Source of the DNA: Marsupella aquatica
Lineage: Eukaryota > Plantae > Marchantiophyta
Reading direction: 5' to 3'
Length of the DNA stretch: 64,000 nucleotides
Assembly (NCBI GenBank): GCA_973895155.1
Contig: OZ316899.1
Span: 2,193,573-2,257,572 of the forward strand
Part shown: positions 7,172 through 60,397 of the stretch, one piece after another
How the letters are laid out: each line of letters opens with the position of its first letter
How positions within the stretch are numbered: the first letter of the stretch is position 1
Notes under the pieces: generated by a model
Database searches by the model: none
What the model was told of the DNA's origin: nothing
Seen by the model: only the letters and a program-made list of their open reading frames with translations
Program-made: the position numbers and the translations under genes

Positions 7172-7503
7172 AACGTCAATCAAGCTGCTCATTTTTGGGG
7201 ATGCCTGTTTGAACGGGCAACTGAGTACATTGGGACCTACGAGGATGAAGAATCGGAAAGGGCAGCACGAGAATGGCAAGAGCTCGCTCGACTGTGGGAA
7301 CTACAGAAGTTTGCCTTCCTTGGAGGGGAGTTCATCAAGGCCGAGTTTTTGTGGACTCCTACTGCCAATCAGCTCGACGACCTTCTATTTTGTGAGAACA
7401 GAATTGTCGGCATCCGGGAAGCCATCAACCATTGCAACGACATACATTGGGACCTAAAGGGTAGCACGGAGGTGTGGACAAAGGCAACTATGCTCGGAGG
7501 AAG
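7172..7503 (+). pseudogene. Fragment of a diverged paralogue of the giant-LTR ORF
   Basis: NVNQAAHFWGCLFERATEYIGTYEDEESERAAREWQELARLWELQKFAF...WDLKGSTEVWTKATMLG is highly similar to the ORF region at 46675-47000. Cut on both sides by later LTR insertions. Confidence 0.85.
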
Positions 7504-10500
7504 TGTGGTGCGTCCCATGGCTCCCTAAACCCAAGAAACCCCCCAGCTCAAGCCGATTCCCGCGGGTTTCGCGCTTGGCGAGGCCATTTCCGCGGCTTAG
7601 CGGCATGGGACGCTGCTAACCTTCTACTACTACTATTAACATTTTACACACATATACTGGACAGATCCTTCATCGGGTCATGAGATACGTAGCCGGCCTA
7701 ATCTAGGCCTTCCCCTGTCTTCCCCTGTCTTCCCCTCCGTCTTGTTAGGTATGTTTGGATTCCGCCGCCGGAATGATCCCCAATAGGCTTGGTTAAGCCG
7801 CTAAGACCTCTCTCAGCTCGACACATCCAACTCTCACTCCCCTGCTTACTTTCCTTCCTTTGGTTGATGTGGGCACTCTTCACACAAGTTAATGCGACAC
7901 ACAAATAGCAAAATGACTCATTCTGACTGAGTCATACCATGCACTTGCCATACAAACAGTACATCTCATACACAAGTTCTACGAACTAAGCCGTGAGGCC
8001 AACTCTATTCAGCTCTTAGGCATGAGGAAACATGAATATACACAAGGGTCACTGTATGACTAACCGAGAGCTTCTCGTACTACTTGATCCCAGCCCGGCT
8101 GGTGCAAACTAAAAACTTGCTAAAGAAGAGGCCCTGAGCTCCCCGCTGCCCAGGTACTTATCCTGGTAGTGGATCCGCCATTCTTTGCATCGTAAGCCTA
8201 ATCTACTTAACAGTAATCTACTTGCCGGAATCTACCTATGTACAGCAAGGCAGGAGCACAAGTGTTGCTCCTACTAGTGGGACCGCAATCCCACTAAGCT
8301 AAGTGTCAGGGCCGCTCCTGGTTCTGATCCTAATCCTAAACGTGGAGATCCGCGCCCGCCCTGCCCACTCACGCCTCCTCCCTCCACGTCCGCCCTCCCT
8401 AAAAGGAACGGCGCCCTTGCACCGTCACGACACCGGTGGTGGATCCTTAATGGACGCCCCCAACGCTTCCTCCTCAGCCACTGCCGTAGGCTCATTCCCT
8501 GACAGATTACCTGCCCTTGACTGAGTCAACTCTCCATCGGCCTGACTGGGTCCACCATCGGCGTCGGCATCGGCTCGAGAATCGGTTACGGCCTCAGCCT
8601 CGGCTACGGTCTCCCCGGCCTGCTCAAGAGGCGGATCTGGAATACCGGCCTCCTTACTGAGTAGTTCGGCTTGGGCCGCACCACCCCCACCTGTGATCAT
8701 AGCGGGATCTATTGCCGTATTCATGTCGGAGGATGGTGTTGGTTCTACCTCTTTGGTCACCACGGCTTGTGGAGTCGGATTACTCCTTGACCCTGAAGGT
8801 TTCCGCTTTTTCTTCTTTTCTGGTTCGGCAGCTGGTCCCTTCCCCTTCCCACTTACCTCCGGCACTGGTGCAGTTGGCGCGGCTTTTTCTTCGGCCAGTA
8901 CCACTCCTGGTAACTTGGTTGCCCCAATTGGAGTTGGGCCTGATGAAGACAAGCACTTAAATACTGCGGCTTGTTTCTTCAGCCGCTCCGTTTGGTTGTC
9001 GGCCCGCCGCTGGAGGTTCTCCATCTTCCTCGTGATTTCCTCCAACTCCTCCTGGGTCTCATCCAGGTCCTTGCGTGCCTCCTCTAGTTCCTTCTGGGCT
9101 TCCTCCCGTTCTTGTTTCAAGGTAGTCCTCTCCTCCTGGGTTGCTTTTAGCTCCTTGTCGAGCTCTGCAATGATGACAGACTCCATCTGGTTCATCTTGG
9201 CGTAAGTCTGTTCGAGCATCTCGTCCCTCTCCCTTAGGTCGGCCTTGAAGCTGGCCGTCAGGGACGCAAGCTCCTACTGCAGCGCCATAATCCCTTGATA
9301 GGATTTCCCTAACTCGGCCTCCTTCTGCTCAAGGGCTCCACGGATTTTCTCGAGCTCCCCTTTCAATGCCCATTCCTTTCTTTGGGTCTCCGCCATGGCC
9401 CGGCTGTTGGCTGTTATGTGGGCCTCCTCTGTATTCTTCAGCTCTTGCTTCCACTTCTCCCTCTCTTTGATCGTGTCAGCCAACTCTCCCTGGGTCTGAG
9501 TCAGTTTATCCTTGATATTCTGATTATCAGCCTGCGCGGTGTCCAACTGCCCCTGCATGATGTTCAGCTCATGTCGTTTAATCCGCAGTTCATCTTGGGC
9601 TTTCTTGGCCACCCTTAGATCTTCAATCTCGGCTTCCATCCTCCTAAGCCGCCGAATGACCTCGTCCTTCTTGCTTCTCTCTAAAGCCACCGCTTCTTCT
9701 AATTGGTGCTTCTCCAACTGCTCCCTATGGAAAAAGGGTCCTACCTCCAACTCTTCTCCAAAGATGCCGAGCGCAAGTTCCCCACACATCTCACCATACT
9801 CCATGGCTCTATTCTTAGCGTAGGTGGAGTAAGTAGAAGTGATCGGGATCGCCCATCGCGGCCTCTGCTCCCAAGCCGTCCTGCGGATCTCTTCAATCGT
9901 GGCTAGAGGTTTGCTTCCTTTTTTGGCTAGCCGCCTGATGTCCTCCGGCCAATCTCCTCCTGGTAAATCCTTTTCCTTAGCCAGGGCTGCCTCCTCCTCC
10001 TGCTTGATTCGCTCCTGAAATTCCTGCACCGTCTGTTTTATGCCGTCGAAGCTCGGGGGAGCAACATCTGGTGGGGGAGACTCAGGGCTACTCTGCTGGT
10101 TGGGGTCCCCTCGCACTACCCTTGGAAGTGTGGGGACAAACCGGCCACAGGTCCTTACTCCTGGAACGTGATGGTCCGACCCATAGCCGGAATTATCATG
10201 GCTGCAGTCCTCCACTGCCTCCTCTACCTCTTGGACATCCGGCTTCTCCCTCTCCTCTTCGTCGGTAGGAGCTTCAGGCAATTCTGCCTCAGATTCGGAG
10301 CTTGAGGTTCCCACGTACATTCGAACACCTGGCTTGGATTTCGGCCTGATTCTCTCCTTGTCTCCAGCAAAGGGGTTTTCTCTTGTGAGCCGGTGTAGGC
10401 CTACCTCTGTAGTAGTGTCCTGCATTGTTGCCGTTGCCGTTGTTGTTGCCGATGCCGATTTCTTTTCTTTCTCCAGTAGTTTCAGCAGACTCTGCATGCC

Positions 10501-12172
10501 TGGTTGCTGCATCGGCAAGTCCTCCTTCCTGGGCCTAAACACCTGCTCGATCGTAGGGCTAACAGGTGGTTGAGGCTTCTCAGCCAACGGCCTCGGCGTT
10601 GGAGCTTCCTCGGGTGCCCTTACCTGCAGGGGAAGTACCGGGGCAAAAGTCTGACCTCTGGCATACCGGCACAACAGCGGCATGTGATAGCCAAGCCGCG
10701 ACACGCTCCCCATGCCGATTACCTGCTGCTCCTCCTTTAAGATCTTCTTCAATTGGTTGAGGAGGTACCCGTTGTAGTCCCGGCTTGGGTCTGGCCTTTC
10801 TGCCAGATAGACCTGTGCCTTGCCGATCTCTGCCCTCGGCAAGTTACAATGCATGGTCACCCGCAAGAAGTCGATCATCTCTCCTATGTGCGGGTTGGTG
10901 CAGGTGTTCCGGAAGAAGCCATTCTTCGTTGATGGCCCGGGGAACGACCGGAACTCCTTGTCAGGCAAGGTCTTCCTGGTATCAACTTTGGTCTTATTGC
11001 CTATCGGCAAGCCAAACACTTCGGCAATTACCTTGGGAGTAAGATAGAAATCCTTCCCATATATCCTCGTGCAATTGGTCTCGGGTTCCCATGACCCCAC
11101 GAATTCTAATAGGTCTGACTCCGGTACCTCCGGCTTCAGCCATGGTAATCTTACAAAGGCCTCTAAGCCGGATCCGGCCATGAAGCCTTGGTACTTCTTG
11201 GTCTGCATGGCCGTAAAGCATGCATCCTCCTCCCGTGCAAAATGTAGTTGCACCTCCACCCGTAGGGTTGCCGCCCAGCCCTTCCAGGTGTCATCCCTGG
11301 TTGGAATGGCCTTGATGGGATCGACCTCCTCCTCTTCGGCTTCTCCCTGCCTCCTGCTCTGCTGCTCGGCTGGCTTCTTTGGTGCCGCCGACCTCGTTCT
11401 TTTTGCCGGGGTGGCTTCATCGTTGACGGCTCCCTTCCTCTTCATCTCTGCTGCCGTGGAGGTTTCTCCTAGCACCGTTGCTTGGGTCCACCTTTCCGTG
11501 CTTCCCTTTAATTCCCAGTGTATGTCGTTGCAGTTCTTGATGGCCTCTCGGATGCCGACGACGCTGTCTTTGCAAAACAAAAGATCGTCGAGTTGATTGG
11601 AAGTAGGCGTCCACAGGAACTCGTCCTTGATGAGTTCGCCTCCTAAGAAAGCCGTCTTCTGCAGCTCCCACAATCGAGCGAGCTCCTGCCGTTCTCGAGC
11701 TGCCCTTTCTGATTCCTCGTCCTCGTAAGTCTTGATGTACTCAGTTGCCCGTTCGAACAGGCATCCCCAGAAATGTGCCGCTTGATTGACGTTGCTCATA
11801 CCCTCCTTAGGTCGATCGTCGGTATCTACTCTCTCCCCGAGTGCTTGCCTAAGCAGCTGACAGTAGTTGGCCTCCCGTAGTCGTCTGCCTAGTTCGTGCT
11901 CGCAAATGAGCCACCATCTCCTGCAAGCGCTCCTTACCCCTCTCCTCTGCCGGTCCTTCTTCCCGTTGATCCTTCCTAGCCGCCGACGCTTAACGCGCCC
12001 TAACCCTAATCGGGTTTTCACCCTCAGTCTTACCTCCGGCCTCGGCCCGGGTTCCATGGTTGCCCCTAATTGTTTATATTTTCCTTGTTTTGTCCCTATA
12101 CTAAGGTGTTCCTAGGGTGCCTTCCTGCTTTACCCACTTAACCGGCCGAGTGATTCCTGTCTAGGCATCACA
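7504..12172 (-). repeat. Giant 3' LTR (4669 bp), TGTGATGC...GCACCACA
   Basis: Colinear over its whole length with the TSD-flanked solo copy 46293-50984. Starts just downstream of the purine tract AAGTGGGGAG (spacer CTA). Termini form a 7/8 inverted repeat. Confidence 0.9.
8425..12057 (-). pseudogene. LTR-encoded ~1210-codon ORF with one premature stop
   Basis: ORFs 9274..12057 and 8425..9219 are in the same frame, split by TAG at 9274-9276 where the intact copy has CAG (MALQ*ELAS vs MALQQELAS). Confidence 0.9.
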
Positions 12173-15100
12173 TAGCTCCCCACTTAATTGTGAAGCGTCC
12201 TCGCGAACAACTTCATCTTCGTCCATATAGTATTTCTTGAGGCGGTCATAATGGATGCGAACTGGATATACCTCTCCCGTAATGTTGGCCAATTGTACGG
12301 AGCCATTGGGGAACATCATGGTTACTCTAAAGGGTCCTAACCAGCGAGTGTAAAGCTTTCCTGGAAACCTACTATACCTACTGTCATAAAGTAGCACAAG
12401 ATCACCGGTATGAATACTAACTACTTTCAATTTTTTATCATACTGCTGCTTCATGATATTCTGTCTATATTCTACTCTCTCGGCTGAAATCATTCTCGCT
12501 TCCTCTAAAGCTTCTAACCTATATTCTCGCTTCTTTAGGCTCTCCTCCGCTGAGGCTCTTTCCTCAATTGTAACTTGAAATGTCGGTATCTCAAGTTGCA
12601 TGGGTACCAGGGCTTCTTGTCCAAAGGTTAAGAAGAAGGGTGTATGACCGGTAGTGGATTTATAGGCAAGATTGTAAGCAAAAACAGCAGCAAACAATTT
12701 ATCGTCCCAATCAAGTTTGTTCTGAGCTACTGTTTTGTTCAATATCTTTCCTATAATTCCGTTTGCTCGTTCTGTCAACCCGTTTGCCTTTGGATGGTAG
12801 GGAGTAGTAGGCCTATGTTTAACTAAATACTGCTCATTTAAACGACTAATTATATCATTCAAAAAATGGGTTCCTCTATCACTAACTAATTCTAGGGGTG
12901 CTCCATACCTGGTGAAGATCTGCTCATACATGAATCTAGCCGTAGTAATTGCATCATCCTTCGTTGTTGGTCTGGCCTCTACCCATTTAGTTGCATAATC
13001 CGTAGCCAGGATTATGTACTTGTTCCGTCGAGGGTGGGTCAGTGGTTTCAGAGGTCCAATGTAATCAATACCCCACTTCTCGAATGGTGCCAGAGGTAGA
13101 ATAGGGTGCAGTGGATGCCTAGTGGACGCCCTTGGTCCTCCCGCTCGTTGACAAGGATCGCATTGTTTGATAAACTGATAGACATCTTTGTGCAAGGTGG
13201 GCCACCAGTAACCGGCATTTAATATCTTCTTAGACGTGGTTACTGGGGCAAAATGTCCTCCGGCCTCCTCTCCATGCATGGCCCGTAGGACTCGTTTTAC
13301 CTCTCTCTTTTCCAAACATCTTTGAATCGTGCCGTTGATTCCATGCTTGTGCAGTATGCCTTTAATGCACTGATACTGTCTGACCTTCCGCACAAAGACT
13401 GCGGCTTGCTCTCGGCTTAATCCTGGCTGTAATCTGGAAGTGCTGAGAAATTGTAAAATCTCAGGGTACCATGTACCAGCTATTTCCACAACGAATAGCT
13501 CCTCATCGGGGAATCGATCATCGATGCAATCCGTGGCAGGTTTACCTGTGATCCTTGAAAAGAAGTCGGCATTGGCATGTAACTTTCCCGGCTTGATTCT
13601 CAACTCATAGTCAAACTCCTATAATAGCAAAATCCATCTTGCTACTCTGCCTGTAAGGTCCGGCTTATTGACTAGGTACTTCAAACTTTCATGATCGGTA
13701 TGAAAGATTACCTTGTACCCTAGTAAATAATGCCTAAACTTTTTACAAGAATAAATGACTCCTAATGCTTCTCTTTCTGTGGTAGAGTAGTTCCGTTCGG
13801 CATCGGCAAGCTGACGGCTTGCGAAGTATATGGGATGGTCCCTTCCTTTTTCATCCAACTGACTTAGTACTGAGCCAATACAGAAGCCCGAGACATCTAC
13901 AAAAACATGAAAATCTTTGTTCCAGTCCGGTGCTATCATGACTGGGGCCTCTACTAACATCTGCTTCAATTCTACCACCGCTGTGACTCGTTCGGGTGTG
14001 GGTTCGAAGTCTGCTCCTGCCTTGAGCATGTTGGTTAATGGTAAAGCTAGCTTGGCAAAATCCTTGATGAACCGGCGATAGTAACCAATGCATCCCAAGA
14101 AGGATCTTACATCCTTTATGTTCTTAGGTTGCATGATATCTAGCCATACTGCTAGCTTACCTTTGTCAATCTCAATGCCCTTCCTTGATACCTTGTGACC
14201 TAGTAGCACCCCCTCGGTTACTGCAAAGAAACATTTATCTGGGTGTAACTTGAGACCCACCTCTCTACATCTCATGAAGGTTTTCCTGAGGTATTTAGCA
14301 TGTTTCGATGCCTTCCCGAATACTGCAAAGTCGTCAATGAAGATTTCCATGAACTTTCTCAAGTAATCATGAAAAATGTTCACCATTAATCGTTGAAACA
14401 TAGCTGGTGCGTTGCAGAGTCCAAACGGCATACGATTGAAGACATAGATTCCCCATTCCGTGATGAAGGCCGTCTTGATTTGGTCTTCCTGCCGAATCCT
14501 GATTTGGTTATAACCAGAGTATCCATCCATGAATGAATATAGTTCATGACTGGCTACCATGTCTAGTACCATATCAGTAAACGGTAAAGGAAAATGGTCT
14601 TTTAATGTTGCTTCATTCAGCTTCCTGTAATCCTGACAAACCCGGATCTTGGGTTTACCATCGGGTCCAGCTTTCTTGGGAACTATCACAATTGGAGACA
14701 CCCAGTTTGAATGCAGGACTGGAGTGATGAATCCAGCTTCCACTAGTTTGTCGATTTCTGTTTTGACCAGCAGGGAATACTTCGGGTTCATCCTTCGAAT
14801 TGGTTGTCGAAATGATTTGGCTCCTAACATGAGATCAATTCGATGTTCCCCTAGTGTTGGATCTACTCCCTTTAGATCTTGGTGACTCCATGCAAACACA
14901 TCCTGAAATTCAATCAATAAGTCACTGATCTCTTTCTCGAGCTCAGGTGCTAGGTTTCTCCCTAAGTTCAGTTCTCTTCCCTCTCCTAAGTCGAGCTTCC
15001 GATATTGCCGTGCTTGGATCATATTAATCTGCTTCTTCAAATTCGGGTCCAGTTCGGCTTCTAGTCTCTCTAATCTCATGCCTCCATAAACTGGAATCTC

Positions 15101-16710
15101 GGCTGGACTAGCCGAGTCGGTCCCTTCCTTGGTGTCCCTAGATTGTCCCCTTGCCGGTCTATTCGGTTTTGAATTGGTGGTCGGCTCCCCTTCCTGCCTT
15201 GGCTCTGGATCATGTCTGTCCATCTCATCCACCTCTTGCTCCTGAGAGTTAGGCCGCTGTGCTCTCTCGGCTTCTAATAGGGCCTCAATTTGTTCTGCCC
15301 TCGTAATCGGCTTGTATGCCGATCCCTTGGTATTTAATTCCTTGCCGATGATCGATGGCGTTGTGAACCCTGCCTGCTCTGCCACAACGCCTGCAGAAAA
15401 TCCACTGTCCCTGCTACTGCTCCTCACTTAGCTGTTTCATCCAATTGGTCTACATCCTTTACTTCCTCCGGAATTGCAGCTAAAAAGGTGGATTCTATTG
15501 TAAAGCAGTCCTCGACCTCTTCGTCTTCTTCTTCCAAGTCACCTTCCATTGGTTCTTGCCATAATCCGCTGGGGGGTACCTCTGGTCCAAAGACACCTTC
15601 TTCGGTTAGGTTAGTGAGGCATTCTAACCAACGTACTTCATCGGCTGACTCCAGTCCACTGTCGTACCCATCTACTTCCCTTATGCTTTTCCTACGGTCA
15701 TCCTTAGTGTCCCAGGATACCGTGATAGAGGGGGTCCCGAAAGTGAACTGCTTTTTACCCCAATCTTCTATTACCTCGGCTAGGTACAGCCATGGCCTAC
15801 CAATCAATAGCCGGAATGACGTAGGATTTACCGGCTTCATTACTACATAGTTAATGCTAAAGAAGATACCTCCTATCTCTGTCTTGATGCCGGTTAACAC
15901 TCCCGTGGGAATGACCTGATATCCATTGGCCATGTTCAACACTCTTCCAGTCATCTCCGGTGTTAGACCCCACCCTTTTGCTGTTGAATCAATCATAATA
16001 CATACCCCTGATCCTCCATCGATGGGTACCCGTAGTAATAATTCTCCTTGAATCATTAAGGGTAATGTTGGGGCTCCTTGATCTTCTTCTATCATTAGTA
16101 CGTCGGATCTGGTTGCTACCTTGGGTAACCTCGGCTTGCCGAGAATAGCCTTCCTTAATTGCTTCCGGAAGTACGGGCTATTTTTCAATAGTTGACCTAC
16201 TGTTGCCGAGACTCTAGATTCTAGTACATCTTTAGCCAGGTCATAGGGAACAATCGGCTTCTCCTCTGGTGGTGTTTCCGTCTTGGATTCGGCCAGTTTT
16301 GCCACGCTAGTCTCCACAGCTGTTGGGTCTTCCGAAGCAAACAATGCTTTTGCTCGTTTTACATCCTTGGCAATGGCTTCGGTATTCTCCAGGGTTTCTA
16401 ATTCTCTTAGTTGTTCCTTAACACTAGCCGTAACAGAGGGGTAGAACAACTTAGGATGATCTCGATTGAAGTCGCTATCTTGTGAAGGATTGGTTTCACT
16501 GGTGGGCTCATGGCTTACCTGTATTGCCGGAGCCCTCCCTTCTCCTTCTGTTGATGTTGACGAAGAGTCGATCCTTTCCTCCGTAACCTTCCCTTTATTT
16601 TTGGCCAGCCCATCCCACCTTTCCTTCCTTCTGGTAGATCGAGTAGAGACCCGGTAGCAATCATGATCTAAATCCTCAATTACTTGAAATAATGTCATTT
16701 GTGAACACAC
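12161..16710 (-). pseudogene. Ty3/gypsy pol (protease, RT, RNase H, integrase) with a frameshift near 15425 and a stop at 13619-13621
   Basis: Protease-like RVPIDGGSGVCIM. RT RVCQDYRKLN...FMDGYSGYNQI...MPFGLCNAP...IFIDDFAV. RNase H VFVDVSG...NYSTTEREAL...FHTDHESL. Integrase H-H-C-C, WGIDYIGP, SDRGTHF, KANGLTER, RWLGPF. Confidence 0.95.
12176..12185 (-). other. Polypurine tract of the giant-LTR gypsy element
   Basis: AAGTGGGGAG on the minus strand, 3 nt before the TG of the LTR, inside the last integrase codons. Confidence 0.7.
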
Positions 16711-27700: not shown

Positions 27701-27887
27701 ACCGTCACCAAAGTGCAACAAGAATATCACCAATATTTTAGTGATCCATTACACAATATGTGAAACAACTTGCAGCCAAGTAGTGAGCCTGTGTTAATCA
27801 GGCCAATTTAACCACTTTGAATGTGGTTGTTCCCAACTCCCTTGTTTGTGACACATTACACTTTCTTTGAAACAACTTACAATCAAG

Positions 27888-37601: not shown

Positions 37602-37624
37602 CGCTCCCTCATTCTTTCAATGCT

Positions 37625-45168: not shown

Positions 45169-46292
45169 GTAATTCTCTGCAACCTTTGGAAAGATGCTGA
45201 GAAACTTAGTTGCCATTTGGCAATCTCTTGTCTTGGCTAAAATTTGTTATAAATCAATTCAAATGCAAGGAAAACATTTGGGGAGTATGTGACATATGCA
45301 GTATTAGGCAATTTTGATTTACGACAACTCCAACATTTTAATCAAGCATATCTGGCCAATTTTTGTTGTTGGCAATCCGTGTGTGGGATTGGAACCTGGA
45401 TGAGAATCACTTTAGACAATAGGCTTTTGTTCTTGGTCAAACTCAATTAGACTAGATCAGGCTAGAAGCTCTATACCAACTTCATCTTTGAAGCTGTCCC
45501 TATAAAGCCAAGAAGGACACTACTTTTTATGTGGAGTTTTGACAAGGACTCACATGCTTTGTGAACTTTTGTTTAACATTACTTTTTTTTAACTCGTTGG
45601 CAGTGGTATGTTGGAAGTGAATTGTGTCAAAGGACGAGAGGATACAAGGTACCACTGGTCCCTGTGCCACCCTAGAAAAGGTGTTTTCCTTTCTCCAAAA
45701 TTATTTGTTGGTCCTAGTCCCTTTGTTGGGTAACTTCTTGCATGTGCTGTTGCACTTCTGATTGATACTAGGTCCTTTGTTGACTAAGACCAGGATGACC
45801 ATGTTGGCAATATTTCTGTTCAATGATTCAACTTGGTGACAGGAGGATATTTTTGAGAGACCAAGCCTTGACCTCAATGGTTGCAAGAAGTAGTTCAGGT
45901 ACATGAAGCAACATAGGTGGTGTTTAGTTTGCTTGCACAGCATGAGTATATAGGCAATTCAAGTGAAGCTAATCAAGGTAAAGTGGTATCATCGTCTTCT
46001 AAACTTAGTACTACTATTGCATGTGATGCTTTCATTTTGGAATTCTGCTATATGAATCTGTAATGTGAACCAGGATGGTTGTCTAAAATTCTTGTTGCCT
46101 GTTTGTAAACAAGGAATTTTACGGTGCGAGCAAACAGGAGTTTTTGCTAGCGAGGCAGCATTGTTAGCGAGGCACATTTTATGGTCAAACTCACAACACA
46201 TTAATGGAAAAAACGACCAAATTTCACTATTTTCCCTCTCTCAAAGTAATGAAAGTGTTATAACTACGGAAATTCATGCATGATTGTCATAT

Positions 46293-49200
46293 TGTGATGC
46301 CTAGACAGGAATCACTCGGCCAGTTAAGTGGGTAAAGCAGGAATGCACCCTGGAAACATCTTAGTATAGGGACAAAACAAGGAAAATATAAACAATTAGG
46401 GGCAACTATGGAACCCGGGCCGAGGCCTGAGGTAAGGACGCTGGGGGTGAAAACTCGATTAGGGTTAGGGCGCATTAAGTGTCGGCGGCTAGGAAGGATC
46501 AACGGGAGGAAGGACCGGAAGAGGAGAGGGGTAAGGAGCGCTTGCAGGAAATGGTGGCTCATTTGTGAGCACGAACTAGGCAGACGACTACGGGAGGCCA
46601 ACTACTGTCAGCTGCTTAGGCAAGCACTCGGGGAGAGAGTAGATACCGACGATCGACCTAAGGAGGGTATGAGCAACGTCAATCAAGCGGCACATTTCTG
46701 GGGATGCCTGTTCGAACGGGCAACTGAGTACATCAAGACTTACGAGGACGAGGAATCAGAAAGGGCAGCTCGAGAATGGCAGGTGCTCGCTCGATTGTGG
46801 GAGCTGCAGAAGACGGCTTTCTTAGGAGGCAAACTCATCAAGGACGAGTTCTTGTGGACTCCTACTTCCAATCAGCTCGACGATCTTCTGTTTTGCAAAG
46901 ACAACATCATCGGCATTCGAGACGCCATCAAGAACTGCAACGACATACACTGGGAATTAAAGGGTAGCACGGAAAGGTGGACCCAGGCAACGGTGCTAGG
47001 AGAAACCTCCACGGCAACAGAGATGAAGAGGAAGGGAGCCGTCAACGATGAAGCCACCCCGGCAAAAAGAACGAGGTCGACGGCACCAAAGAAGCCAGCC
47101 GAGCAGCAGAGCAGGAGGCAGGGAGAAGCCGAAGAGGAGGAGGTCGATCCCATCAAGGCCATTCCAACCAGGGATGACACCTGGAAAGGCTGGGCGGCAA
47201 CCCTACCGGTGGAGGTGCAACTACATTTTGCACGGGAGGAGGATGCATGCTTTACAGCCATGCAGACCAAGAAGTACCAAGGCTTCATGGCCGGATCCGG
47301 CTTAGAGGCCTTTGTAAGATTACCATGGCTGAAGCCGGAGGTGCCGGATTCAGACCTATTAGAATTCGTGGGGTCATGGGAACCCAAGACCAATTGCACG
47401 AGGATATATGCGAAGGATTTCTATCTTACTCCCAAGGTGATTGCCGAAGTGTTTGGCTTGCCGATAGGCAATAAGACCAAAGTTGATACCAGGAAGACCT
47501 TGCCTGACAAGGAGTTCCGGTCGTTCCCCGGGCCATCAACGAAGAATGGCTTCTTCCGGAACACCTGCACCAACCCGCACATAGGAGAGATGATCGACTT
47601 CTTGAGGGTGACCATGCACTGTAACTTGCCGAGGGCAGAGATCGGCAAGGCACAGGTCTATCTGGCAGAGAGGCCAGACCCAAGCCGGGACTACAACGGG
47701 TACCTCCTCAACCAATTGAAGAAGATCTTAAAGGAGGAGCAGCAGGTAATCGGCATGGGGAGCGTGTCGCGGCTTGGCTATCACATGCCGCTGTTGTGCC
47801 GGTATGCCAGAGGTCAGACCTTTGCCCCAGTACTTCCCCTGCAGGTAAGGGCACCCGAGGAAGCTCCAGCACCGAGGCCGGTAGCAGAGAAGCCTCAACC
47901 ACCTGTTAGCCCTACGATCGAGCAGGTGTTTAGGCCAAGGAAGGAAGACTTGCCGATGCAGCAACCAGGCATGCAGAATCTGCTGAAACTACTGGAGAAA
48001 GAAAGATCGGCATCGGCAACGACAACGTCAACGGCAACAATGCAGGACACTACTCCAGAGGTAGGCCTACACCGGCTTACAAGGGAAAACCCCTTTACTG
48101 GAGACAAGGAGAGAATCAGGCCAGAATCCAAGCCGGGTGTTCGAATGTACGTGGGAGTCTCAAGCTCTGAATTTGAGGCAGAATTGCCTGAAGTTCCTAC
48201 CGACGAAGAGGAGAAGGAGAAGCCGGAAGTCCAAGAAGTAGAGGAGGCAGTGGAGGACGGCAGCCATGATAACTCCGGCTATGGGTCGGACCATCACGTT
48301 CCAGGAGTAAGGACCTGTGGCCGGTTTATCCCCACACTTCCAAGGGTAGTACGAGGTGACCCCAACCAACAAAGTAGCCCTGAGTCTCCCCCACCAGATG
48401 TTGCTCCCCCGAGCTTTGACGGCATAAAACAGACGGCGCAGGAATTTCAGGAGCGAATCAGGCAGGAAGAGGAGGCAGCCCTGGCTAGAGAAAAGGATTT
48501 GCCAGGAGGAGATTGGCCGGAGGACATCAAGCGGCTAGCCGAAAAAGGAAGCAAACCTCTAGCCACGATTGAAGAGATCCGCAAGACGGCTTGGGAGCAG
48601 AGGCCGCGGTGGATGATGCCGATGACTTCTACTTCCTCCACCTATGCTAAAGACAGAGCCATGGAGTACGGGGAGATGTGTGGAGAACTGGCGCTCAGCA
48701 TCTTTGGGGAGGAGTTGGAGCAGGGACCCTTTTTCCAGAGGGAGATGTTGGAGAAGCGCCAATTAGAAGAAGCGGTGACCTTGGAAAGAAGCAAGAAGGA
48801 TGAGGTCATCCGTCGGCTTAGGGAAAGGGAAGCCGAAATCAAGGACCTGAGGGTGGCCAAGAAAGCCCAAGATGAGCTGCGGATTAAGCGGCATGAGCTA
48901 AATATCATGCATGGCCAGTTGGATACCGCACAATCTGATAATCGAATGATCGAGAATCTACTGACGCGGACCCAAGGAGAGTTGGCCGATACGATCAAAG
49001 AGAGGGAGAAGTGGAAGCGAGAGCTGAGGAATGCAGAGGAGGCCCACATAACAGCCAACAGCCGGGCCATGGCGGAGACCCAAAGAAAGGAATGGGCGTT
49101 GAAGGGAGAGCTCGAGAAAATTCGCGGAGCCCTTGAGCAGAAGGAGGCCGAGTTGGGGAAATCCTATCAAGGGATTATGGCGCTGCAACAGGAGCTTGCG

Positions 49201-50984
49201 TCCCTGACGGCCAGCTTCAAGGCCGACCTAAGGGAGAAGGACGAGATGCTCGATCAGACTTACGCCAAGATGAACCAGATGGAGTCTGTCATCATTGTAG
49301 AGCTCGACAAGGAGCTAAGAGCAACCCGGGAGGAGAGGGCTACCTTGAAGAAAGAACTGGAGGAAGCCCACAGGGAACGGGAGGAAGCCCAAAAGGAACT
49401 AGAAGAGGCGCGCAAGGACCTGGATGAGACCCAGGAGGAGTTGGAGGAAATCACGAGGAAGATGGAGAACCTCCAGCGGCGGGCCGACAACCAAACAGAG
49501 CGGCTGAAGAAACAAGCCGCAGTATTTAAGTGCTTGTCTTCATCAGGCCCAACTCCAATTGGGGCAACCAAGTTACCAGGAGTGGTACTGGCCGAAGAAC
49601 AAGCCGCGCCACCTGCACCAGTGCCGGAAGTAAGTGGGAAGGGGAAGGGACCAGCTGCCGAACCAGAAAAGAAGAAGAAGCGGAAACCTTCAGGGTCAAG
49701 GAGTAATCCGACTCCACAGGCCGTGGTGACCAAGGAGGTAGACCCAGCACCAACCTCCGACATGAACACGGCAATAGATCCCGCTATCATCAAAGGTGGG
49801 GATGGTGCGGCCCAAGCCGAACTACTCAGTAATGAGGCCGGTATCCCAAATCTGCCTCTTGAGCAGGCCGGGGAGACCATAGCCGAGGTTGAGGCCGTAG
49901 CCAAGAATGATTCCCGAGCCGATGCCGATGGTGGACCCAGTCAGGCCGATGGAGAGTTGACTCAGTCAAGGGCAGGTAATCTGTCAGAAAACGAACCTAC
50001 GGTAGTGGCTGAGGAGGAAGCGTTGGGGGCGTCCATTGAGGATCCACCACCGGTGTCGTGACGGTACAAGGGCGTCGTTCCTTTTAGGAAGGGCGGACGT
50101 GGAGGGAGGAGGCGTGAGTGGGCAGGGCGGGCGCTGATCTCCAAGTTTAGGGTTAGGATCAGGACCAGGAGCGGCCCTGACACTTAGCTTAGTGGGATTG
50201 CGGTTCCACTGGTAGGAGCAACACTTGTGCTCCTGCCTTGCTATACATAGGTAGATCCGGGCAAGTAGATTACTGTTAGGTAGATTAGGCTTACGCTGCA
50301 AAGAATTAGGCGGATCCACTACCAGGATAAGTACCTGGGCAGCGGGGAGCTCAGGGCCTCTTCTTTAGCAAGTTTTTAGTTTGCACCAGCCGGGCTGGGA
50401 TCAAGTAGTAAGGGAAGCTCTCGGTTAGTCATACAGTGACCCTTGTGTATATTCATGTTTCCTCATGCCTAAGAGCTGAATAGAGTTGGCCTCACGGCTT
50501 AGTTCGCAGAGCTTGTGTATGAGATGTACTATTTGTATGGCAAGTGCATGGTATGACTCAGTCAGAAGGAGTCATTTTGCTATTTGTGTGTCGCATTAAC
50601 TTGTGTGAAGAGTGCCCACATCAACTAACAGAAGGAAGGAAAGTAAGCAGGGGAGTGAGAGTTGGATGTGTCGAGCTGAGAGAGGTCTTAGCGGCTTAAC
50701 CAAGCCTATTGGGGATCATTCCGGCGGCGGAATCCAAACATACCTAACAAGACGGAGGGGAAGACAAGGGAAGGCCTAGATTAGGCCGGCTACGTATCTC
50801 ATGACCCGATGAAGGATCTGTCCAGTATATGTGTGTAAAATGTTAATAGTAATAGTAGTAGTAGAAGGTTAGCAGCGTCCCATGCCACTAAGCCGCGGAA
50901 ACGGCCTCGCCAAGCGCGAAACCTGCGGGAATCGGCTTGAGCTGGGGGGTTTCTTGGGTTTAGGGAGCCATGGGACGCACCACA
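46293..50984 (+). mobile_element. Solo giant LTR (4692 bp) of the non-chromoviral gypsy family
   Basis: TGTGATGC...GCACCACA termini, perfect TSD CATAT (46288-46292, 50985-50989), colinear with 7504-12172, no gag/pol inside. Confidence 0.93.
46408..50061 (+). CDS. Intact LTR-encoded 1217-aa protein (plant transposon/mobile-domain-like region, acidic linker, long coiled coil)
   Basis: Uninterrupted 3654-bp ORF. Domain FVRLPW...LLEFVGSW...FYLTPKVIAEVFGLP; C-terminal third is E/K/Q-rich and heptad-like. The real start could be the downstream ATG at MSNVNQ (about 46669). Confidence 0.85.
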   Translation: MEPGPRPEVRTLGVKTRLGLGRIKCRRLGRINGRKDRKRRGVRSACRKWWLICEHELGRRLREANYCQLLRQALGERVDTDDRPKEGMSNVNQAAHFWGCLFERATEYIKTYEDEESERAAREWQVLARLWELQKTAFLGGKLIKDEFLWTPTSNQLDDLLFCKDNIIGIRDAIKNCNDIHWELKGSTERWTQATVLGETSTATEMKRKGAVNDEATPAKRTRSTAPKKPAEQQSRRQGEAEEEEVDPIKAIPTRDDTWKGWAATLPVEVQLHFAREEDACFTAMQTKKYQGFMAGSGLEAFVRLPWLKPEVPDSDLLEFVGSWEPKTNCTRIYAKDFYLTPKVIAEVFGLPIGNKTKVDTRKTLPDKEFRSFPGPSTKNGFFRNTCTNPHIGEMIDFLRVTMHCNLPRAEIGKAQVYLAERPDPSRDYNGYLLNQLKKILKEEQQVIGMGSVSRLGYHMPLLCRYARGQTFAPVLPLQVRAPEEAPAPRPVAEKPQPPVSPTIEQVFRPRKEDLPMQQPGMQNLLKLLEKERSASATTTSTATMQDTTPEVGLHRLTRENPFTGDKERIRPESKPGVRMYVGVSSSEFEAELPEVPTDEEEKEKPEVQEVEEAVEDGSHDNSGYGSDHHVPGVRTCGRFIPTLPRVVRGDPNQQSSPESPPPDVAPPSFDGIKQTAQEFQERIRQEEEAALAREKDLPGGDWPEDIKRLAEKGSKPLATIEEIRKTAWEQRPRWMMPMTSTSSTYAKDRAMEYGEMCGELALSIFGEELEQGPFFQREMLEKRQLEEAVTLERSKKDEVIRRLREREAEIKDLRVAKKAQDELRIKRHELNIMHGQLDTAQSDNRMIENLLTRTQGELADTIKEREKWKRELRNAEEAHITANSRAMAETQRKEWALKGELEKIRGALEQKEAELGKSYQGIMALQQELASLTASFKADLREKDEMLDQTYAKMNQMESVIIVELDKELRATREERATLKKELEEAHREREEAQKELEEARKDLDETQEELEEITRKMENLQRRADNQTERLKKQAAVFKCLSSSGPTPIGATKLPGVVLAEEQAAPPAPVPEVSGKGKGPAAEPEKKKKRKPSGSRSNPTPQAVVTKEVDPAPTSDMNTAIDPAIIKGGDGAAQAELLSNEAGIPNLPLEQAGETIAEVEAVAKNDSRADADGGPSQADGELTQSRAGNLSENEPTVVAEEEALGASIEDPPPVS

Positions 50985-51616
50985 CATATGCATTCCATAC
51001 TTGACTCTGCGCACAACGATATTGGAAAATAATAACCGAATGGCAGGCACTTTCATGAGAACATGGTCATTCTTTACACATTGAAAGTATGGATATCCAA
51101 AAACCAGCACATGCACAGAAAAAACTATAAGAGTCGATGGTAAGTAGTACAACCAGTTTAACACTGAAGCTATTGCATTAGTCATAAACCTCATCTTCTG
51201 AATCATCAAATATTGAACTTCTACTGGGATCGCTACTGGTCTCCCTCTCAGTAGACTCGGCAGACTCATCTAAATACTGGCTGTCCCCGCTTCATTGTCA
51301 ATAAACCTTGAACAATCCAGATATCTACAAGCTCCTCTGATTGAGCGAAGCCCTTTTGCCTCCCAGGTCAAGACCATAGGAGCGTCATCAACCTCCTTCG
51401 CCGACTTCTCAGCATAGCACGGAAGAGTGAAAGGCTTCTCTGGAGTAACCACGATGGATTCCTCCACTTCCTTTCGAAGATGAAATCTCTCCTCAGAAAA
51501 CCAATCCACCCTCCTATCACTGAAGCAACCACCGACATCAGTTGAGGAAGAGCAACAAAATGAATAAAACAAGAGAAACCAAATTGGGAGTCCGACACCA
51601 GAAGAGACCAAGTACT

Positions 51617-57901: not shown

Positions 57902-60200
57902 TGTGATGCCTTGCCAGGATCACGAAGTAATAACTAAGCCTAAAAAAATGGCTAAATAAGGATAGATAGAGAGTATAAAGTAACAATAAAGATCGATGCT
58001 GATTTCTACGTGTAGATAATAAAGGAAAGGATCCAACGGTTGAGATCCAGCGAATTGGAGTTATGACCTAATCCATGCTTGATCACAAGGACCCCTAAGT
58101 GGCGGCTTTGGAGTAAGGTGACCAATACTCTGCCATTTTGCATTCTCGTGTACACGGTTTCGACATTGAGGAGCGACTGTCAGTCGAGTGCTAAGGTGGA
58201 TTGGGAGATTGTGCAAATTCTTGGCATTCGGTGGAATGAACACGGTGAATCAGGCAGGGAAGTTTTGGGGCTGTTTTCTTGAAGAAGCAAGGCAGCTGAT
58301 ACCTACGTATGAAGACGTTGAGCCGGAGCGCGCAGCCAGAGAATGAGCGGAGCTTGCGCGATTGTGGGGAATTCACAAAACGACATTCGTAGATATGGAG
58401 GAGGTGTTGGAAAAGTTCTCGTGGACACCCACCAATGCGGAGCTTGACAAATTGCTGATCCGGGAGAATAAGGTTGTGGGGATTAGGGAGGCAATCAAGA
58501 ACGCAGGGCAGCCACTTTGGGAATTGAAGGGTCACACTGCAAAGTGGACAAAGAAAGCCATTCTCGGGGAGTATTCAAGCGCTGAAGAGATGAAGCGCAA
58601 GGGAGGTTTGGCATCCGCCACTCCAGCAAAGCGAACTAGGTCGGAGAGACCAATCAAGATGGAATCCGGGCCAGTTAGAGATCGGGCTATAGAGGATAAA
58701 ACCATGATAGGGTGGGTGAACAGGTTACCTGCCGATTTACAATTACAGTTCGCAAGAGATGAGGATGAGGTCTTCAGTGCCGTTCAGGATAATAAATATG
58801 CAGGATATATGAATGACACCGGGTTGGAGGGCTTTGTCAGGTGTGCTGGAGGATGGTAGACATACTAGATGAGGATCTGTTGGACTTCGTGGGATGCTGG
58901 GAGGCTTCTTCCAACACGGCGCTGTTGTATGAAAAGGTGTTTGAACTAACACCTGCGCTTATTGAAGCCGTCTTTGCTTTACCAACAGGAAGGAAGACTA
59001 AGGTGGAGCAGAGGAAGACGTTGTTGGATGACCAGTTCAGATGTGACGCCATTGGAATTTGACAAGATGAAGGAAGCTGAAGCCGGTCTACAAGAGAGGA
59101 TTAAGGAGTGGGGGCCCGGAATGCAGAACAGGAATGCCAGCTACTAGGAGGAGAGTGGCCGGAAGAAATAAGATGGCTTAGTGAGAGGCAGGCCAAACCT
59201 CTCACTGACTTTGATCAATTACGGGCAGAGGCTTGGGAGAGACGACCTTGATGGCAGATGCTAGTATCACCTGGGAGGTCAAACTACGCAAGAAATCAGG
59301 CTAAGGAGTATGGAGACATGTGTGGACTCTTAGCCTTAGAAATCTTTGGTAATGAGTTGGAATCCGGGCCATTTCTTAGAAAAGAAGTGGCTGATCAAAC
59401 GAGATTGGAGGAGGCAATGACGTTGGAGCGGTTAAAGAAAGAGGAGGTAATCACTCGGCTTCGCTCCATGGAAGCCGAAGTTGCTAAGACAAAGTCTGGT
59501 CAACCAACTCAGCAGGATCTCTTGCCTAAGCAGCAGGAATTGGAGGTGGCGAACAACCAATTGGAAAACTACCAATTGGATAACCAGCAGATCAAGGAAA
59601 AATTGACAAAGGTAGAGCTGGAGTTAGCCGATTCAAAAGCATAAGTTCAGGGTCTAAATCGCCAGGTCGAGAGGCTGAGAAAGACGGCTAAGGATCAGGC
59701 CACCCAGAGCGAGAAGGCCTTGGCAGAAGCCCAAAGGAAGTATGACAAGTTACTCGACCGGTTGGAGGCCATACGTGAGAAGCATGATGACGCCATGTGC
59801 ACAGCGGCCAATGATCACCTAAACCGGGTTCAACAGATACGCAAGGAGCTCCAGGAGGAGCTAACCAGGACAAAGCAGGCATGGACGGACGAGGTCACAA
59901 AACTAGAAGGCATCAACGACTCCTTGAAAGCAGCCGTAGATAAGCAAGAGTTGGAGATCGTGCAGATCTTAAATGAGGAGCTGAAGATGGCCAGGTCCGA
60001 GATACAATGGCTTAACGATGAAGTTGAAGACGTATCTCAGGAATTGGAGGAGGCCAAGGATAAGATGCTCGGGTTGCAGAAGCGTGCCGACAATCAAACA
60101 GAGAAATTGAAGAAGTATGCCGAAGCGGGATATGGGTCACCAACTGAAAGGCTTCCCGTCAGTAGTATGGTAGGCGGAAATACAGTGAAGCCAAAGCCAA
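57902..60200 (+). mobile_element. Diverged, 3'-truncated and internally deleted member of the giant ORF-bearing LTR family
   Basis: Starts TGTGATGCCTTGCCAGGATCAC (compare TGTGATGCCTAGACAGGAATCAC). Fragmented ORF FSWTPTNAELDKLL...GIREAIKN...WELKG...EMKRKG, YGDMCGLLALEIFGNELESGPF and LQKRADNQTEKLKK. Confidence 0.8.
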
Positions 60201-60224
60201 AGAACAACCAATCTCCTCAATCTA

Positions 60225-60395
60225 AAATGAGAATGCCTTGCCATGCTCCATTATCATCTTTTGAAATGCCACTTGCTCAACCTCCATAAGTAACCCATCT
60301 GAACCACTTCGCCAAACTCTCTTGAGTAAACTTATGCCCTATCCGATCAGTTGGCCTCAGCCTTGGTTCCAATCTTGCTCGATCCATCACCTCCA
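60225..60395 (-). pseudogene. Short Ty3/gypsy pol fragment (pre-RT region)
   Basis: Translates as RARLEPRLRPTDRIGHKFTQESLAK..., recognised only by resemblance; lies between two truncated LTRs. Confidence 0.3.
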
Positions 60396-60397
60396 TC

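What the first reader, a model, noticed from the sequence alone, without database searches (positions are those of the whole stretch)
46293..50984. 4.7-kb retrotransposon LTR that itself encodes an intact 1217-aa protein
Seen: this segment has TG...CA ends with a 7/8 terminal inverted repeat and a perfect CATAT TSD, so it has the structure of a solo LTR. The second copy (7504-12172) directly follows the PPT and integrase of a Ty3/gypsy pol, so it is a true 3' LTR. About 78% of the LTR is one ORF. Known: accessory ORFs of plant Athila/Tat/Ogre elements normally lie between the LTRs; LTR-resident genes are best known from retroviruses (MMTV sag, the nef overlap with U3). Inference: each full element would carry two copies of the gene, and solo-LTR formation leaves a complete gene, possibly with its own promoter, scattered in the genome. 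The protein could be an anti-silencing or chromatin factor, or a particle or targeting scaffold.
Basis: partly seen in the sequence, partly recalled or inferred. Interest (0 to 1): 0.88.

Follow-up and report, generated by a model that had tools for sequence, protein, structure and literature searches.

The report
Retrotransposon LTR carrying its own gene
The 4.7-kb segment is a genuine long terminal repeat of a liverwort-type Ty3/gypsy retrotransposon that contains a complete, selectively maintained 1217-codon accessory gene, so every insertion carries the gene twice and every solo LTR leaves one copy behind.

Summary
Window 46293-50984 is a TG...CA unit flanked by a perfect CATAT duplication. 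It has a 94%-identical second copy (7504-12172, minus strand) that starts directly after a polypurine tract and the integrase end of a Ty3/gypsy pol. One ORF (46408-50061, 1217 aa) fills 78% of it.

The window has no element with this unit at both ends, but relatives in the liverwort Calypogeia fissa do. One complete 16-kb element has 4.8/5.1-kb LTRs (98% identical), TG...CA ends, a CCATT duplication and the same polypurine tract. A homologue of the ORF lies inside both of its LTRs. A nested solo LTR there has its own 5-bp duplication.

The ORF is a real gene: dN/dS is 0.27 between the two window copies and 0.12 against a third fragment, while control frames give 1.1-1.5.

In a sister family the homologous gene is internal, between integrase and a 1.7-kb LTR. 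The likeliest origin is therefore an upstream shift of the polypurine tract that moved a 3' accessory gene into U3.

The protein has no Pfam, PDB or fold match. It has a conserved domain with about 20 relatives, a coiled-coil-like stretch and basic clusters. Its function, and its U3 versus R/U5 placement, remain unproven.

The parts
46288..46292 (.). Left target-site duplication CATAT of solo LTR A
   Evidence: Read directly from the sequence. It is identical to 50985-50989.
46293..50984 (+). LTR copy A, a solo LTR of 4692 bp with TG...CA ends and a 7/8 terminal inverted repeat
   Evidence: No gag or pol lies next to it, and it has a perfect 5-bp duplication.
46408..50061 (+). Intact 1217-codon accessory ORF inside LTR A. 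It starts 115 bp from the LTR start, and its ATG has A at -3 and G at +4.
   Evidence: dN/dS against copy B is 0.27, with control frames at 1.15 and 1.46.
47149..47823 (+). Conserved domain of the ORF (aa 248-472). It is the only part with detectable relatives and the most constrained part (4 non-synonymous against 8 synonymous differences).
   Evidence: It has no Pfam, PDB or fold match.
48640..49527 (+). Coiled-coil-like part of the ORF (aa 745-1040). It is almost proline-free and 66% E/K/R/L/Q/A.
   Evidence: It gives only weak hits to coiled-coil families (ATG16, PUMA_CC, APG6_N).
50062..50984 (+). Non-coding 0.92-kb tail of the LTR, proposed to be the ancestral core LTR (promoter, R, U5 and the 3' end recognised by integrase)
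   Evidence: It is 2.7% divergent between A and B, against 5.4% in the ORF. In C. fissa only the last ~870 bp of the LTRs align between subfamilies. The functional assignment is inferred.
50985..50989 (.). Right target-site duplication CATAT
7504..12172 (-). LTR copy B (4669 bp), the 3' LTR of a Ty3/gypsy element
   Evidence: It is 94% identical to A over its whole length. It starts directly after the polypurine tract and the pol end.
8428..12057 (-). Copy of the accessory ORF in LTR B. It is broken by one premature stop. It has no frameshift and differs from A by five in-frame indels.
12173..12191 (-). Polypurine tract with its flanking bases, directly upstream of LTR B. The same 19 nt precede the 3' LTRs in C. 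fissa loci L001, L003 and L004.
12161..15427 (-). pol of element B (RT, RNase H, integrase zinc-binding and core domains). It is interrupted once by an in-frame stop, and its stop codon lies inside the LTR.
15424..16710 (-). gag-like ORF of element B (428 aa, no Pfam hit). It is in a different frame from pol, which may be the native arrangement. The element is cut off upstream of it: no 5' LTR or primer-binding site is present in the window.
   Evidence: (34-45% identity to the C. fissa gag regions).
7172..7502 (+). Fragment C, a piece of an older LTR of the same family (82% nt identity, 83% aa identity to ORF aa 89-198). It lies between the ends of two later insertions.
   Evidence: dN/dS against A is 0.12.
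57902..60396 (+). LTR D, a diverged LTR that starts with the same 9 nt as A and is cut off at its 3' side. It carries a broken ORF homologue (58233-60121, 37-51% aa identity).

Best explanation
The 4.7-kb unit is the true LTR of a non-chromodomain Ty3/gypsy retrotransposon family of liverworts. Its first ~3.8 kb is a sense-strand accessory gene and its last ~0.9 kb is a conventional LTR core. The proposed mechanism is as follows. In the ancestor the gene was an ordinary 3' accessory ORF lying between integrase and the polypurine tract, as it still is in a sister family. In this family the polypurine tract that primes plus-strand DNA lies directly after integrase, so everything downstream of it, including the whole gene, is U3 by definition. 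The genomic RNA then carries the gene once, at its 3' end. Reverse transcription copies U3 to both ends, so the integrated DNA carries the gene twice. LTR-LTR recombination leaves a solo LTR that still holds a whole gene (copy A). The protein is a trans-acting element protein maintained by purifying selection. It has a basic N-terminus, a conserved ~225-aa domain of unknown fold, disordered acidic stretches, a ~300-aa coiled-coil-like rod and a lysine-rich cluster, which suggests an oligomeric, probably nuclear factor. Shown here: the LTR status, the gene inside it, selection on the gene, and the internal position of the homologue in the sister family. Inferred: the U3 placement, the direction of the boundary shift, the route of expression and what the protein does.
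For: LTR status in the window: TG...CA ends and the CATAT duplication of A; B follows the polypurine tract and integrase, and the pol stop lies inside it. Relatives: a complete C. fissa element in L004 spans 2029-18173. Its LTRs are 4773 and 5123 bp (98% identical), it has a CCATT duplication and the same polypurine tract, and the ORF homologue lies in both LTRs. In L001 the 5' LTR is 8748-13611, the annotated homologue P0009 lies inside it, and the 3' LTR starts right after integrase. L003 has an LTR pair plus an inverted solo LTR (12070-16706) with an AAGCA duplication, and each LTR holds the homologue. Coding: dN/dS is 0.27 for A against B and 0.12 for A against C, with control frames at 1.1-1.5. 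Copy D keeps 37-51% amino-acid identity although its DNA similarity is almost gone. Origin: in L005 the intact 889-aa homologue P0148 (10001-12670) lies between integrase and a polypurine tract plus a 1.67-kb LTR (12851). L002 is a second copy with the same layout. In L007 a 679-aa post-integrase ORF runs ~0.3 kb into a 1.69-kb LTR and is a weak profile match to the domain (probability 61%, E 8e-5). Core: the last ~0.9 kb of the LTR is the best-conserved DNA, both in the window and in C. fissa. The protein has no membrane segment, a proline-free coiled-coil-like region and basic clusters.
Against: The window has no element with the unit at both ends. B's element lacks its 5' LTR and primer-binding site. 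The primer-binding site could not be verified in any locus: no tRNA genes were at hand, and a conserved motif sits 3 nt after the LTR in L005 but 55-60 nt after it in L001, L003 and L004. No RNA data exist, so the transcription start and poly(A) site inside the LTR are unknown. A TATA-like run lies about 20 bp upstream of the ATG and would fit a start upstream of the gene. The LTRs of the two families share no detectable DNA similarity, so the idea that the tail is the old LTR rests on size and conservation only. The direction of the change (internal to LTR) is assumed by parsimony. In L004 the LTR gene is split into several pieces, and at least two interruptions are shared by both LTRs. That copy therefore inserted with a broken gene, so the gene is not needed in cis. 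Protein function is unsupported by any homology.
Confidence: 0.72

Rival explanations
1. The unit is an LTR, but the gene lies in R/U5 rather than U3. Transcription would start in the first ~0.1-0.4 kb of the LTR, making the gene the first cistron of the genomic RNA, upstream of the primer-binding site.
For: A TATA-like run lies ~20 bp upstream of the ATG. Homology among copies C, D and A begins only at about aa 87-89, next to the second in-frame Met. The real start could therefore be later, leaving ~375 bp for a promoter and leader. Differences in aa 1-87 are too few to show constraint (3 synonymous, 6 non-synonymous).
Against: The homologous gene in the sister family lies 3' of integrase and upstream of the polypurine tract. 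A shift of that tract alone puts it in U3, whereas moving it into U5 needs more steps. The best-conserved DNA is the last ~0.9 kb, the size of an ordinary LTR with promoter, R and U5.
Confidence: 0.15
2. The 4.7-kb unit is not an LTR. It would be a separate mobile element, or a nested insertion that landed twice, once by chance next to a pol gene.
For: In the window it is never seen at both ends of one element.
Against: The unit has no internal terminal repeats or transposase or RT of its own. The pol stop codon lies inside it, and the polypurine tract abuts it. In C. fissa the homologous units flank gag-pol as 94-98% identical direct repeats, with a single 5-bp duplication outside the pair.
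Confidence: 0.02
3. The ORF is a decaying relic, either a transduced host gene fragment or a chance ORF, with no present function for the element.
For: It has no Pfam, PDB or fold match and only ~20 relatives among 1.8 billion representative proteins. Several copies are broken (B, D and the L004 LTRs). L004 inserted with an already broken copy.
Against: Synonymous changes are in excess in two independent comparisons. Protein similarity is retained after DNA similarity is lost (copy D, and C. fissa). Intact copies of 1217, 889 and 518 aa exist in two genomes. Every homologue whose context could be read lies in the same place relative to integrase.
Confidence: 0.06
4. The intact copy in solo LTR A is no longer an element gene. 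It would be a domesticated host gene expressed from its own or a flanking promoter.
For: Copy A is fully intact although it is detached from any gag-pol. In C. fissa, P0019 lies in a locus with no pol within 10 kb and is annotated as a gene, apparently with more than one exon.
Against: A has a perfect duplication and is only 5% from B, so it may simply be young. There is no orthology or expression evidence. The surroundings are nested transposons.
Confidence: 0.05

Closest known systems
Plant Ty3/gypsy elements of the Athila/Tat group (Tat, Ogre, Retand) with additional ORFs and very long LTRs
   Same: The pol order is RT, RNase H, integrase, and Pfam finds no chromodomain. The best flowering-plant hits of the RT include proteins that also carry the ATHILA ORF-1 (PF03078) or PF20167 domains. 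The element has a sense-strand accessory ORF downstream of integrase, multi-kb LTRs and a 5-bp duplication. Liverwort Tat elements without the extra RNase H are described in PMC13468544.
   Different: The reviews I read place additional ORFs in the internal region (PMC7264820, PMC11963269). Here the polypurine tract lies upstream of the ORF, so the ORF is part of the LTR and is duplicated. The protein matches none of the known additional-ORF families in Pfam. Lineage placement by an RT tree was not done.
The sister family in Calypogeia fissa (loci L005 and L002) with the homologous gene internal
   Same: It has a homologous domain (25% identity, E 8e-13 to P0148), the same gene order, the same TGTGAG start and GGTTAACA end of the LTRs as the long-LTR C. 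fissa family, and acidic and coiled-coil-like tails.
   Different: Its LTRs are only 1.67 kb. The gene ends ~180 bp before the polypurine tract and is single-copy per element. Its RT is 47-57% identical to the window's, against 60-67% for the long-LTR family.
Retroviral accessory genes that lie in or overlap U3
   Same: The position is analogous: a gene downstream of pol or env that falls inside the 3' LTR, is therefore present in both LTRs of the integrated DNA, and would need its own mRNA.
   Different: No sequence or fold relationship was returned by any search. The gene here is far larger (1217 aa, 78% of the LTR), and the host is a liverwort retrotransposon without an env gene. The U3 placement is inferred here, not mapped.

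Membership tests
LTR of a Ty3/gypsy LTR retrotransposon | TG...CA termini with a short terminal inverted repeat | tested here: met
   A and B start TGTGATGC and end GCACCACA. The C. fissa LTRs start TGTGAG and end TAACA.
LTR of a Ty3/gypsy LTR retrotransposon | 5-bp target-site duplication at the outer boundaries | tested here: met
   CATAT flanks solo LTR A. CCATT flanks the whole L004 element. AAGCA flanks the L003 solo LTR. It is not checkable for B because its 5' end is missing, and it is not clean for L005 or L007.
LTR of a Ty3/gypsy LTR retrotransposon | The same unit as a direct repeat at both ends of one gag-pol element | tested here: met
   Not met in the window. Met in relatives: L004 (98% identical), L003 (96-98%) and L001 (94-95%; its 3' copy is cut by the locus end).
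LTR of a Ty3/gypsy LTR retrotransposon | Polypurine tract directly upstream of the 3' copy | tested here: met
   The same 19-nt tract abuts the LTR in the window and in L001, L003 and L004.
LTR of a Ty3/gypsy LTR retrotransposon | tRNA primer-binding site directly downstream of the 5' copy | tested here: inconclusive
   The window has no 5' copy. No tRNA genes were found in the window or in loci L001-L004. Candidate motifs differ in distance from the LTR end between loci.
LTR of a Ty3/gypsy LTR retrotransposon | pol domain order RT, RNase H, integrase | tested here: met
   RVT_1, RT_RNaseH, then Integrase_H2C2 and rve on the minus strand at 15427-12161.
Athila/Tat-group elements with an internal additional ORF | Additional ORF lies between pol and the polypurine tract and 3' LTR | tested here: not met
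   In the window and in L001, L003 and L004 the polypurine tract precedes the ORF. The feature is met only in the sister family, L005 and L002.
Athila/Tat-group elements with an internal additional ORF | RT groups with the lineage in a reference phylogeny | not tested
   I only have a ranked hit list: C. fissa 63-67%, Riccia and Marchantia 49-59%, flowering plants 41-51%. No reference RT set was available.
env-like additional ORFs (Athila type) | Signal peptide or transmembrane segments | tested here: not met
   The highest 19-residue Kyte-Doolittle mean is 0.74, so there is no hydrophobic segment.
Retroviral U3-resident accessory genes (sag, nef) | ORF within U3, downstream of the polypurine tract and upstream of the transcription start | not testable with these tools
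   The position downstream of the polypurine tract is shown. The transcription start is unknown without RNA data.
Retroviral U3-resident accessory genes (sag, nef) | Sequence or fold relationship to those proteins | tested here: not met
   No such hit came from Pfam, PDB sequences or Foldseek. The structure models were of low confidence (pLDDT 50-52).
Known plant transposon protein domains (PF20167 Transposase_32, plant mobile domain PF10536) | Match to the Pfam model | tested here: not met
   No match up to E = 10 for the window protein, its five pieces or 13 homologues. I had these two families in mind because of a helix, hairpin, helix motif.

The most novel reading that the evidence does not exclude
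This would be a stable lineage of plant retrotransposons in which a large accessory gene has become part of U3. Each transposition would then duplicate the gene, and each solo LTR would seed the genome with a complete, independently expressible copy. The protein would be a new class of element-encoded nuclear coiled-coil factor, for example one that counteracts host silencing or directs integration. The solo-LTR copies would also be a ready pool for host domestication.
Probability: 0.15. Interest if true: 0.8.

Novelty: new variant of a known kind. Interest (0 to 1): 0.62.

Why it matters
Accessory genes of plant LTR retrotransposons are described as lying between the LTRs. Here the same gene family is seen in two states, possibly three: internal, perhaps overlapping the LTR start, and wholly inside the LTR. 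This shows that the LTR boundary can move over a gene simply because the plus-strand primer site is relocated.

There are three consequences. First, LTRs of nearly 5 kb arise that automatic annotation will split or misread as genes. Second, the gene dose doubles per insertion. Third, solo LTRs, normally regarded as dead remnants, can retain an intact protein-coding gene. The arrangement is a plant counterpart of the U3-resident genes of some retroviruses. It also offers a natural system for studying how such genes are expressed and whether hosts recruit them. The protein family is uncharacterised and so far seen almost only in liverwort sequences.

Tried and rejected
1. A whole-protein search in the 5.8-billion-sequence collection found nothing. 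An exact look-up of the ORF found it on no public contig.
2. Pfam gave no significant family for the whole protein, for five pieces of it, or for 13 homologues up to E = 10. The only hits were weak coiled-coil families.
3. The PDB sequence searches, one with a profile of the domain and one with the coiled-coil piece, gave only chance-level hits.
4. Two AlphaFold jobs (aa 240-480 with 14 sequences, aa 85-480 with 25 sequences) gave mean pLDDT of 50 and 52. Only a ~35-residue helix, hairpin, helix patch reached 80-86. Foldseek against PDB gave nothing below E = 1. I did not run the viral library on such a poor model.
5. A profile search for more domain relatives added only one protein, P0148. 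A scan of JGI metagenome contigs found none, and the alignment was too diverse to seed that scan.
tblastn against all fetched loci found no match outside the domain, apart from copy D in the window.
7. I looked for the 5' LTR and primer-binding site of B's element. A nucleotide BLAST of LTR A, tblastn with the ORF, and a conserved leader motif from C. fissa all failed in the window.
8. DNA similarity between the 1.67-kb LTR of the sister family and the tail of the long LTRs was not detectable.
9. A purine-rich run followed by TG shortly after the ORF stop in A, and a similar junction at the start of the conserved tail in L001 and L004, could be relics of the old LTR start. They are too weak to count.
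10. Loci L006 and L002 gave no clean LTR boundaries with duplications in a pattern scan.
11. Tandem Repeats Finder cannot see the ~0.7-kb-period array upstream of B's gag.

None was put into a tool or used as evidence. An earlier count gave the bounds of the longest open stretch of copy B's ORF, which discloses where that copy is interrupted. Some tblastn tables printed by my scripts show segment bounds from which interruptions could be guessed. I have not repeated these in the report and have deleted nothing.

Full report
**1. The observation**

- Window 46293-50984 (unit A, 4692 bp) starts TGTGATGC and ends GCACCACA. It is flanked on both sides by CATAT.
- A BLAST of A against the window finds one other full-length copy, unit B at 7504-12172. 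B lies on the minus strand and is 94% identical: 228 substitutions (174 of them transitions) and 10 indels.
- Read on the minus strand, B is directly preceded by a 19-nt purine-rich tract (12191-12173). Before that comes the end of an ORF with the integrase zinc-binding and core domains, and further upstream an ORF with RVT_1 and RNase H, then a gag-like ORF.
- The pol stop codon lies 10-12 nt inside B.
- A holds one ORF of 1217 codons (46408-50061), which is 78% of the unit.
- A has no internal direct or inverted repeat of 25 bp or more, so it is not a small element with its own LTRs.
The one omission is that B is in the opposite orientation to A, so the two cannot be the two LTRs of one element.

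**2. Is the ORF a gene?**

- Between A and B the ORF shows 99 synonymous and 96 non-synonymous differences. dN/dS is 0.27. The same calculation in the two other frames gives 1.15 and 1.46.
- The window holds two more relatives.
  - Fragment C (7172-7502, plus strand) is 82% identical in DNA and 83% in protein to ORF aa 89-198. Its dN/dS against A is 0.12, with controls at 1.08 and 1.52.
  - LTR D starts at 57902 with the same nine bases as A. It carries a broken homologue (58233-60121) that keeps 37-51% amino-acid identity although DNA similarity has almost vanished.
- B's copy has one premature stop, no frameshift and five in-frame indels relative to A.
- Constraint is strongest in aa 248-472 (4 non-synonymous against 8 synonymous differences).
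- The ORF is therefore a protein-coding gene that was under purifying selection while the family spread.

**3. Is the unit an LTR?**

The window cannot answer this by itself. B's element lacks a 5' LTR and a primer-binding site. Upstream of its gag lie an AT-rich stretch, a nested copia and a tandem array. I therefore looked for relatives.

- An exhaustive HMMER search with ORF aa 1-520 found only 20 proteins in 1.8 billion representatives. All matched parts of aa 92-508. The only ones with a named source organism were from the liverwort Calypogeia fissa.
- The window's RT is closest to C. fissa proteins (63-67%), then to unnamed environmental contigs and to Riccia and Marchantia. The window therefore probably comes from a liverwort that is absent from the collections. 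This is an inference.

Loci fetched around these proteins settle the question.

- **L004** holds a complete element at 2029-18173.
  - The 5' LTR is 2029-6801 and the 3' LTR is 13051-18173. They are 98% identical, and the 3' copy has ~0.37 kb extra.
  - Both start TGTGAG and end TAACA, and the whole element is flanked by CCATT.
  - The 3' LTR is preceded by exactly the same 19-nt tract as in the window, and the integrase ORF runs a few codons into it.
  - tblastn places the ORF's domain inside both LTRs.
- **L001** shows the same layout. The 5' LTR is 8748-13611 with the annotated homologue P0009 (518 aa) inside it, and the 3' LTR starts at 19937 right after integrase.
- **L003** has an LTR pair plus an inverted solo LTR (12070-16706) nested in its integrase. 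That solo LTR is flanked by AAGCA, and all three LTRs hold the homologue.

The pol of these three elements is 60-67% identical to the window's. So units of this kind sit at both ends of gag-pol, with duplications at exactly these boundaries, in three independent cases. The 4.7-kb unit is a true LTR, A is a solo LTR and B is a 3' LTR.

**4. How the gene came to be inside the LTR**

- A more distant C. fissa family (RT 47-57% and integrase 35% identical to the window's) carries the homologous gene in the conventional place.
  - In L005 the LTRs are only 1.67 kb (1875-3543 and 12851 to ~14517, 97% identical).
  - There the intact 889-aa gene P0148 (10001-12670) lies between integrase and a purine tract that abuts the 3' LTR.
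  - L002 is a second copy of that family with the same order.
  - P0148 aligns with the window protein over aa 262-421 (25% identity, E 8e-13).
- In an environmental contig (L007, RT 59% identical to the window's), a 679-aa ORF follows integrase and runs about 0.3 kb into a 1.69-kb LTR. Its N-terminal part is a weak profile match to the domain (hhalign probability 61%, E 8e-5). I treat this as a tentative intermediate.
- In the long LTRs, the last ~0.9 kb is the best-conserved DNA.
  - In the window the tail is 2.7% divergent between A and B, against 5.4% in the ORF.
  - In C. fissa only the last ~870 bp align between L001 and L004.

The simplest reading is that the long LTR is an accessory gene joined to an ordinary ~0.9-kb LTR core. 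The polypurine tract that defines the LTR start lies upstream of the gene in this family and downstream of it in the sister family.

- By the standard mechanism of reverse transcription (established knowledge), everything between that tract and the RNA's 3' end is copied to both ends of the DNA. A shift of the tract alone is therefore enough to duplicate the gene.
- I infer that the gene lies in U3, is present once in the genomic RNA, and needs a subgenomic, spliced or reinitiating route for translation.
- The ATG has a good context (A at -3, G at +4), lies about 100 nt after the pol stop, and is in a different frame. The ORF's frame is closed upstream of that ATG, so it is not a pol extension.
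- The rival placement in R/U5, with a start site in the first few hundred bases, is not excluded without RNA data.

**5. The protein**

- It has no Pfam family, no PDB sequence relative and no usable structure model.
  - Mean pLDDT was 50 and 52.
  - Only a helix, hairpin, helix patch around aa 314-349 reached 80-86.
  - Foldseek gave no hit below E = 1.
- Its composition divides it into these parts:

| Residues | Character |
|---|---|
| 1-87 | Basic (29% K+R) |
| 248-472 | Conserved domain |
| 473-744 and 1041-1217 | Proline-rich, net-acidic stretches |
| 745-1040 | Almost proline-free, 66% E/K/R/L/Q/A, weak hits to coiled-coil families |

- There are basic clusters at aa 37 and aa 1088, and no hydrophobic segment, so the protein is not env-like.
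- The C. fissa homologues share the domain and the long acidic and helical tails.
- My best guess is an oligomeric, probably nuclear, trans-acting element protein. This is inference only.
- In L004 the LTR gene is in several pieces, and at least two interruptions are shared by both LTRs. That copy therefore inserted with a broken gene, which means the gene is not required in cis.

**6. Comparison with what is known**

- The element resembles the Athila/Tat group of plant Ty3/gypsy elements. Pfam finds no chromodomain, it has a sense ORF after integrase, and its LTRs are very long. An RT tree was not made.
- The reviews I read place additional ORFs in the internal region (PMC7264820, PMC11963269). 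A phrase search for ORFs within LTRs returned nothing relevant to plants.
The resemblance is positional only, and no homology was returned.
- I rate the finding as a new variant of a known kind.

**7. Limits**

- The window has no full element.
- The primer-binding site is unresolved.
- The U3 assignment, the direction of the boundary shift and the protein's function are all inferred.
- Synonymous divergence is very uneven along the ORF: the synonymous proportion is 0.05 in the domain and 0.27 in the coiled-coil part. A and B may therefore be mosaics of different lineages.
- The slips I noticed are declared under "tried and rejected".

Noticed in passing
window 17110-23712: A copia-type element lies on the minus strand, nested just upstream of B's gag. 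Its 158-bp LTRs are 100% identical and it has a TGACA duplication, so the insertion is very recent. A related copy (about 80-84% identical, inverted, with 154-bp LTRs 99.4% identical) lies at 27886-32876.
   Followed up: partly
window 23920-27443: A tandem array has a period of about 0.68-0.71 kb and four units that are 79-88% alike. It is interrupted at 25174-26265 by a 1.1-kb repeat ('X'). X also occurs at 3253-4733, 6366-7172 and 60397-61728, in two cases just downstream of the integrase of a different gypsy family, so it is probably that family's LTR. Tandem Repeats Finder cannot see the array because of its period limit.
   Followed up: partly
window 7172-7503: The old LTR fragment C is bounded on one side by the end of repeat X and on the other by the end of LTR B. 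It seems to have been hit by two later insertions only ~330 bp apart. LTRs of this family appear to be frequent landing sites.
   Followed up: no
window 46408-50061 compared with 8428-12057: Synonymous divergence between copies A and B varies about five-fold along the gene: 0.05 in aa 248-472 and 0.27 in aa 745-1040. This suggests recombination between diverged lineages of the family, or a mutation hotspot.
   Followed up: no
window 33688-39639 (minus strand): A LINE-type element is present, with an endonuclease/exonuclease/phosphatase domain, a zf-RVT domain, and an upstream ORF with DUF4283 and a zinc knuckle.
   Followed up: no
window 56173-57595 (plus strand): A remnant of a MULE transposase (MULE and SWIM domains) ends ~0.3 kb upstream of the start of LTR D.
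   Followed up: no
L001 ~13670, L003 ~7060, L004 ~6850, L005 ~3550: A conserved T-run followed by GGCG lies 3 nt after the 5' LTR in the short-LTR family but 55-60 nt after it in the long-LTR family. If this is the primer-binding site, the spacing in the long-LTR family is unusual. If it is not, the bases directly after those LTRs are not conserved between copies.
   Followed up: partly
L002 12493-14519: In this C. fissa locus the LTR that follows the accessory gene is itself followed by sequence matching the 5' internal region of the same family. Two elements seem to lie in tandem and share one LTR.
   Followed up: no
L006 10001-12034: The C. fissa homologue P0019 (612 aa) is annotated as a gene, apparently with more than one exon. 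No pol lies within 10 kb and no LTR boundaries were recognisable. It could be a decayed solo LTR or a domesticated copy.
   Followed up: partly
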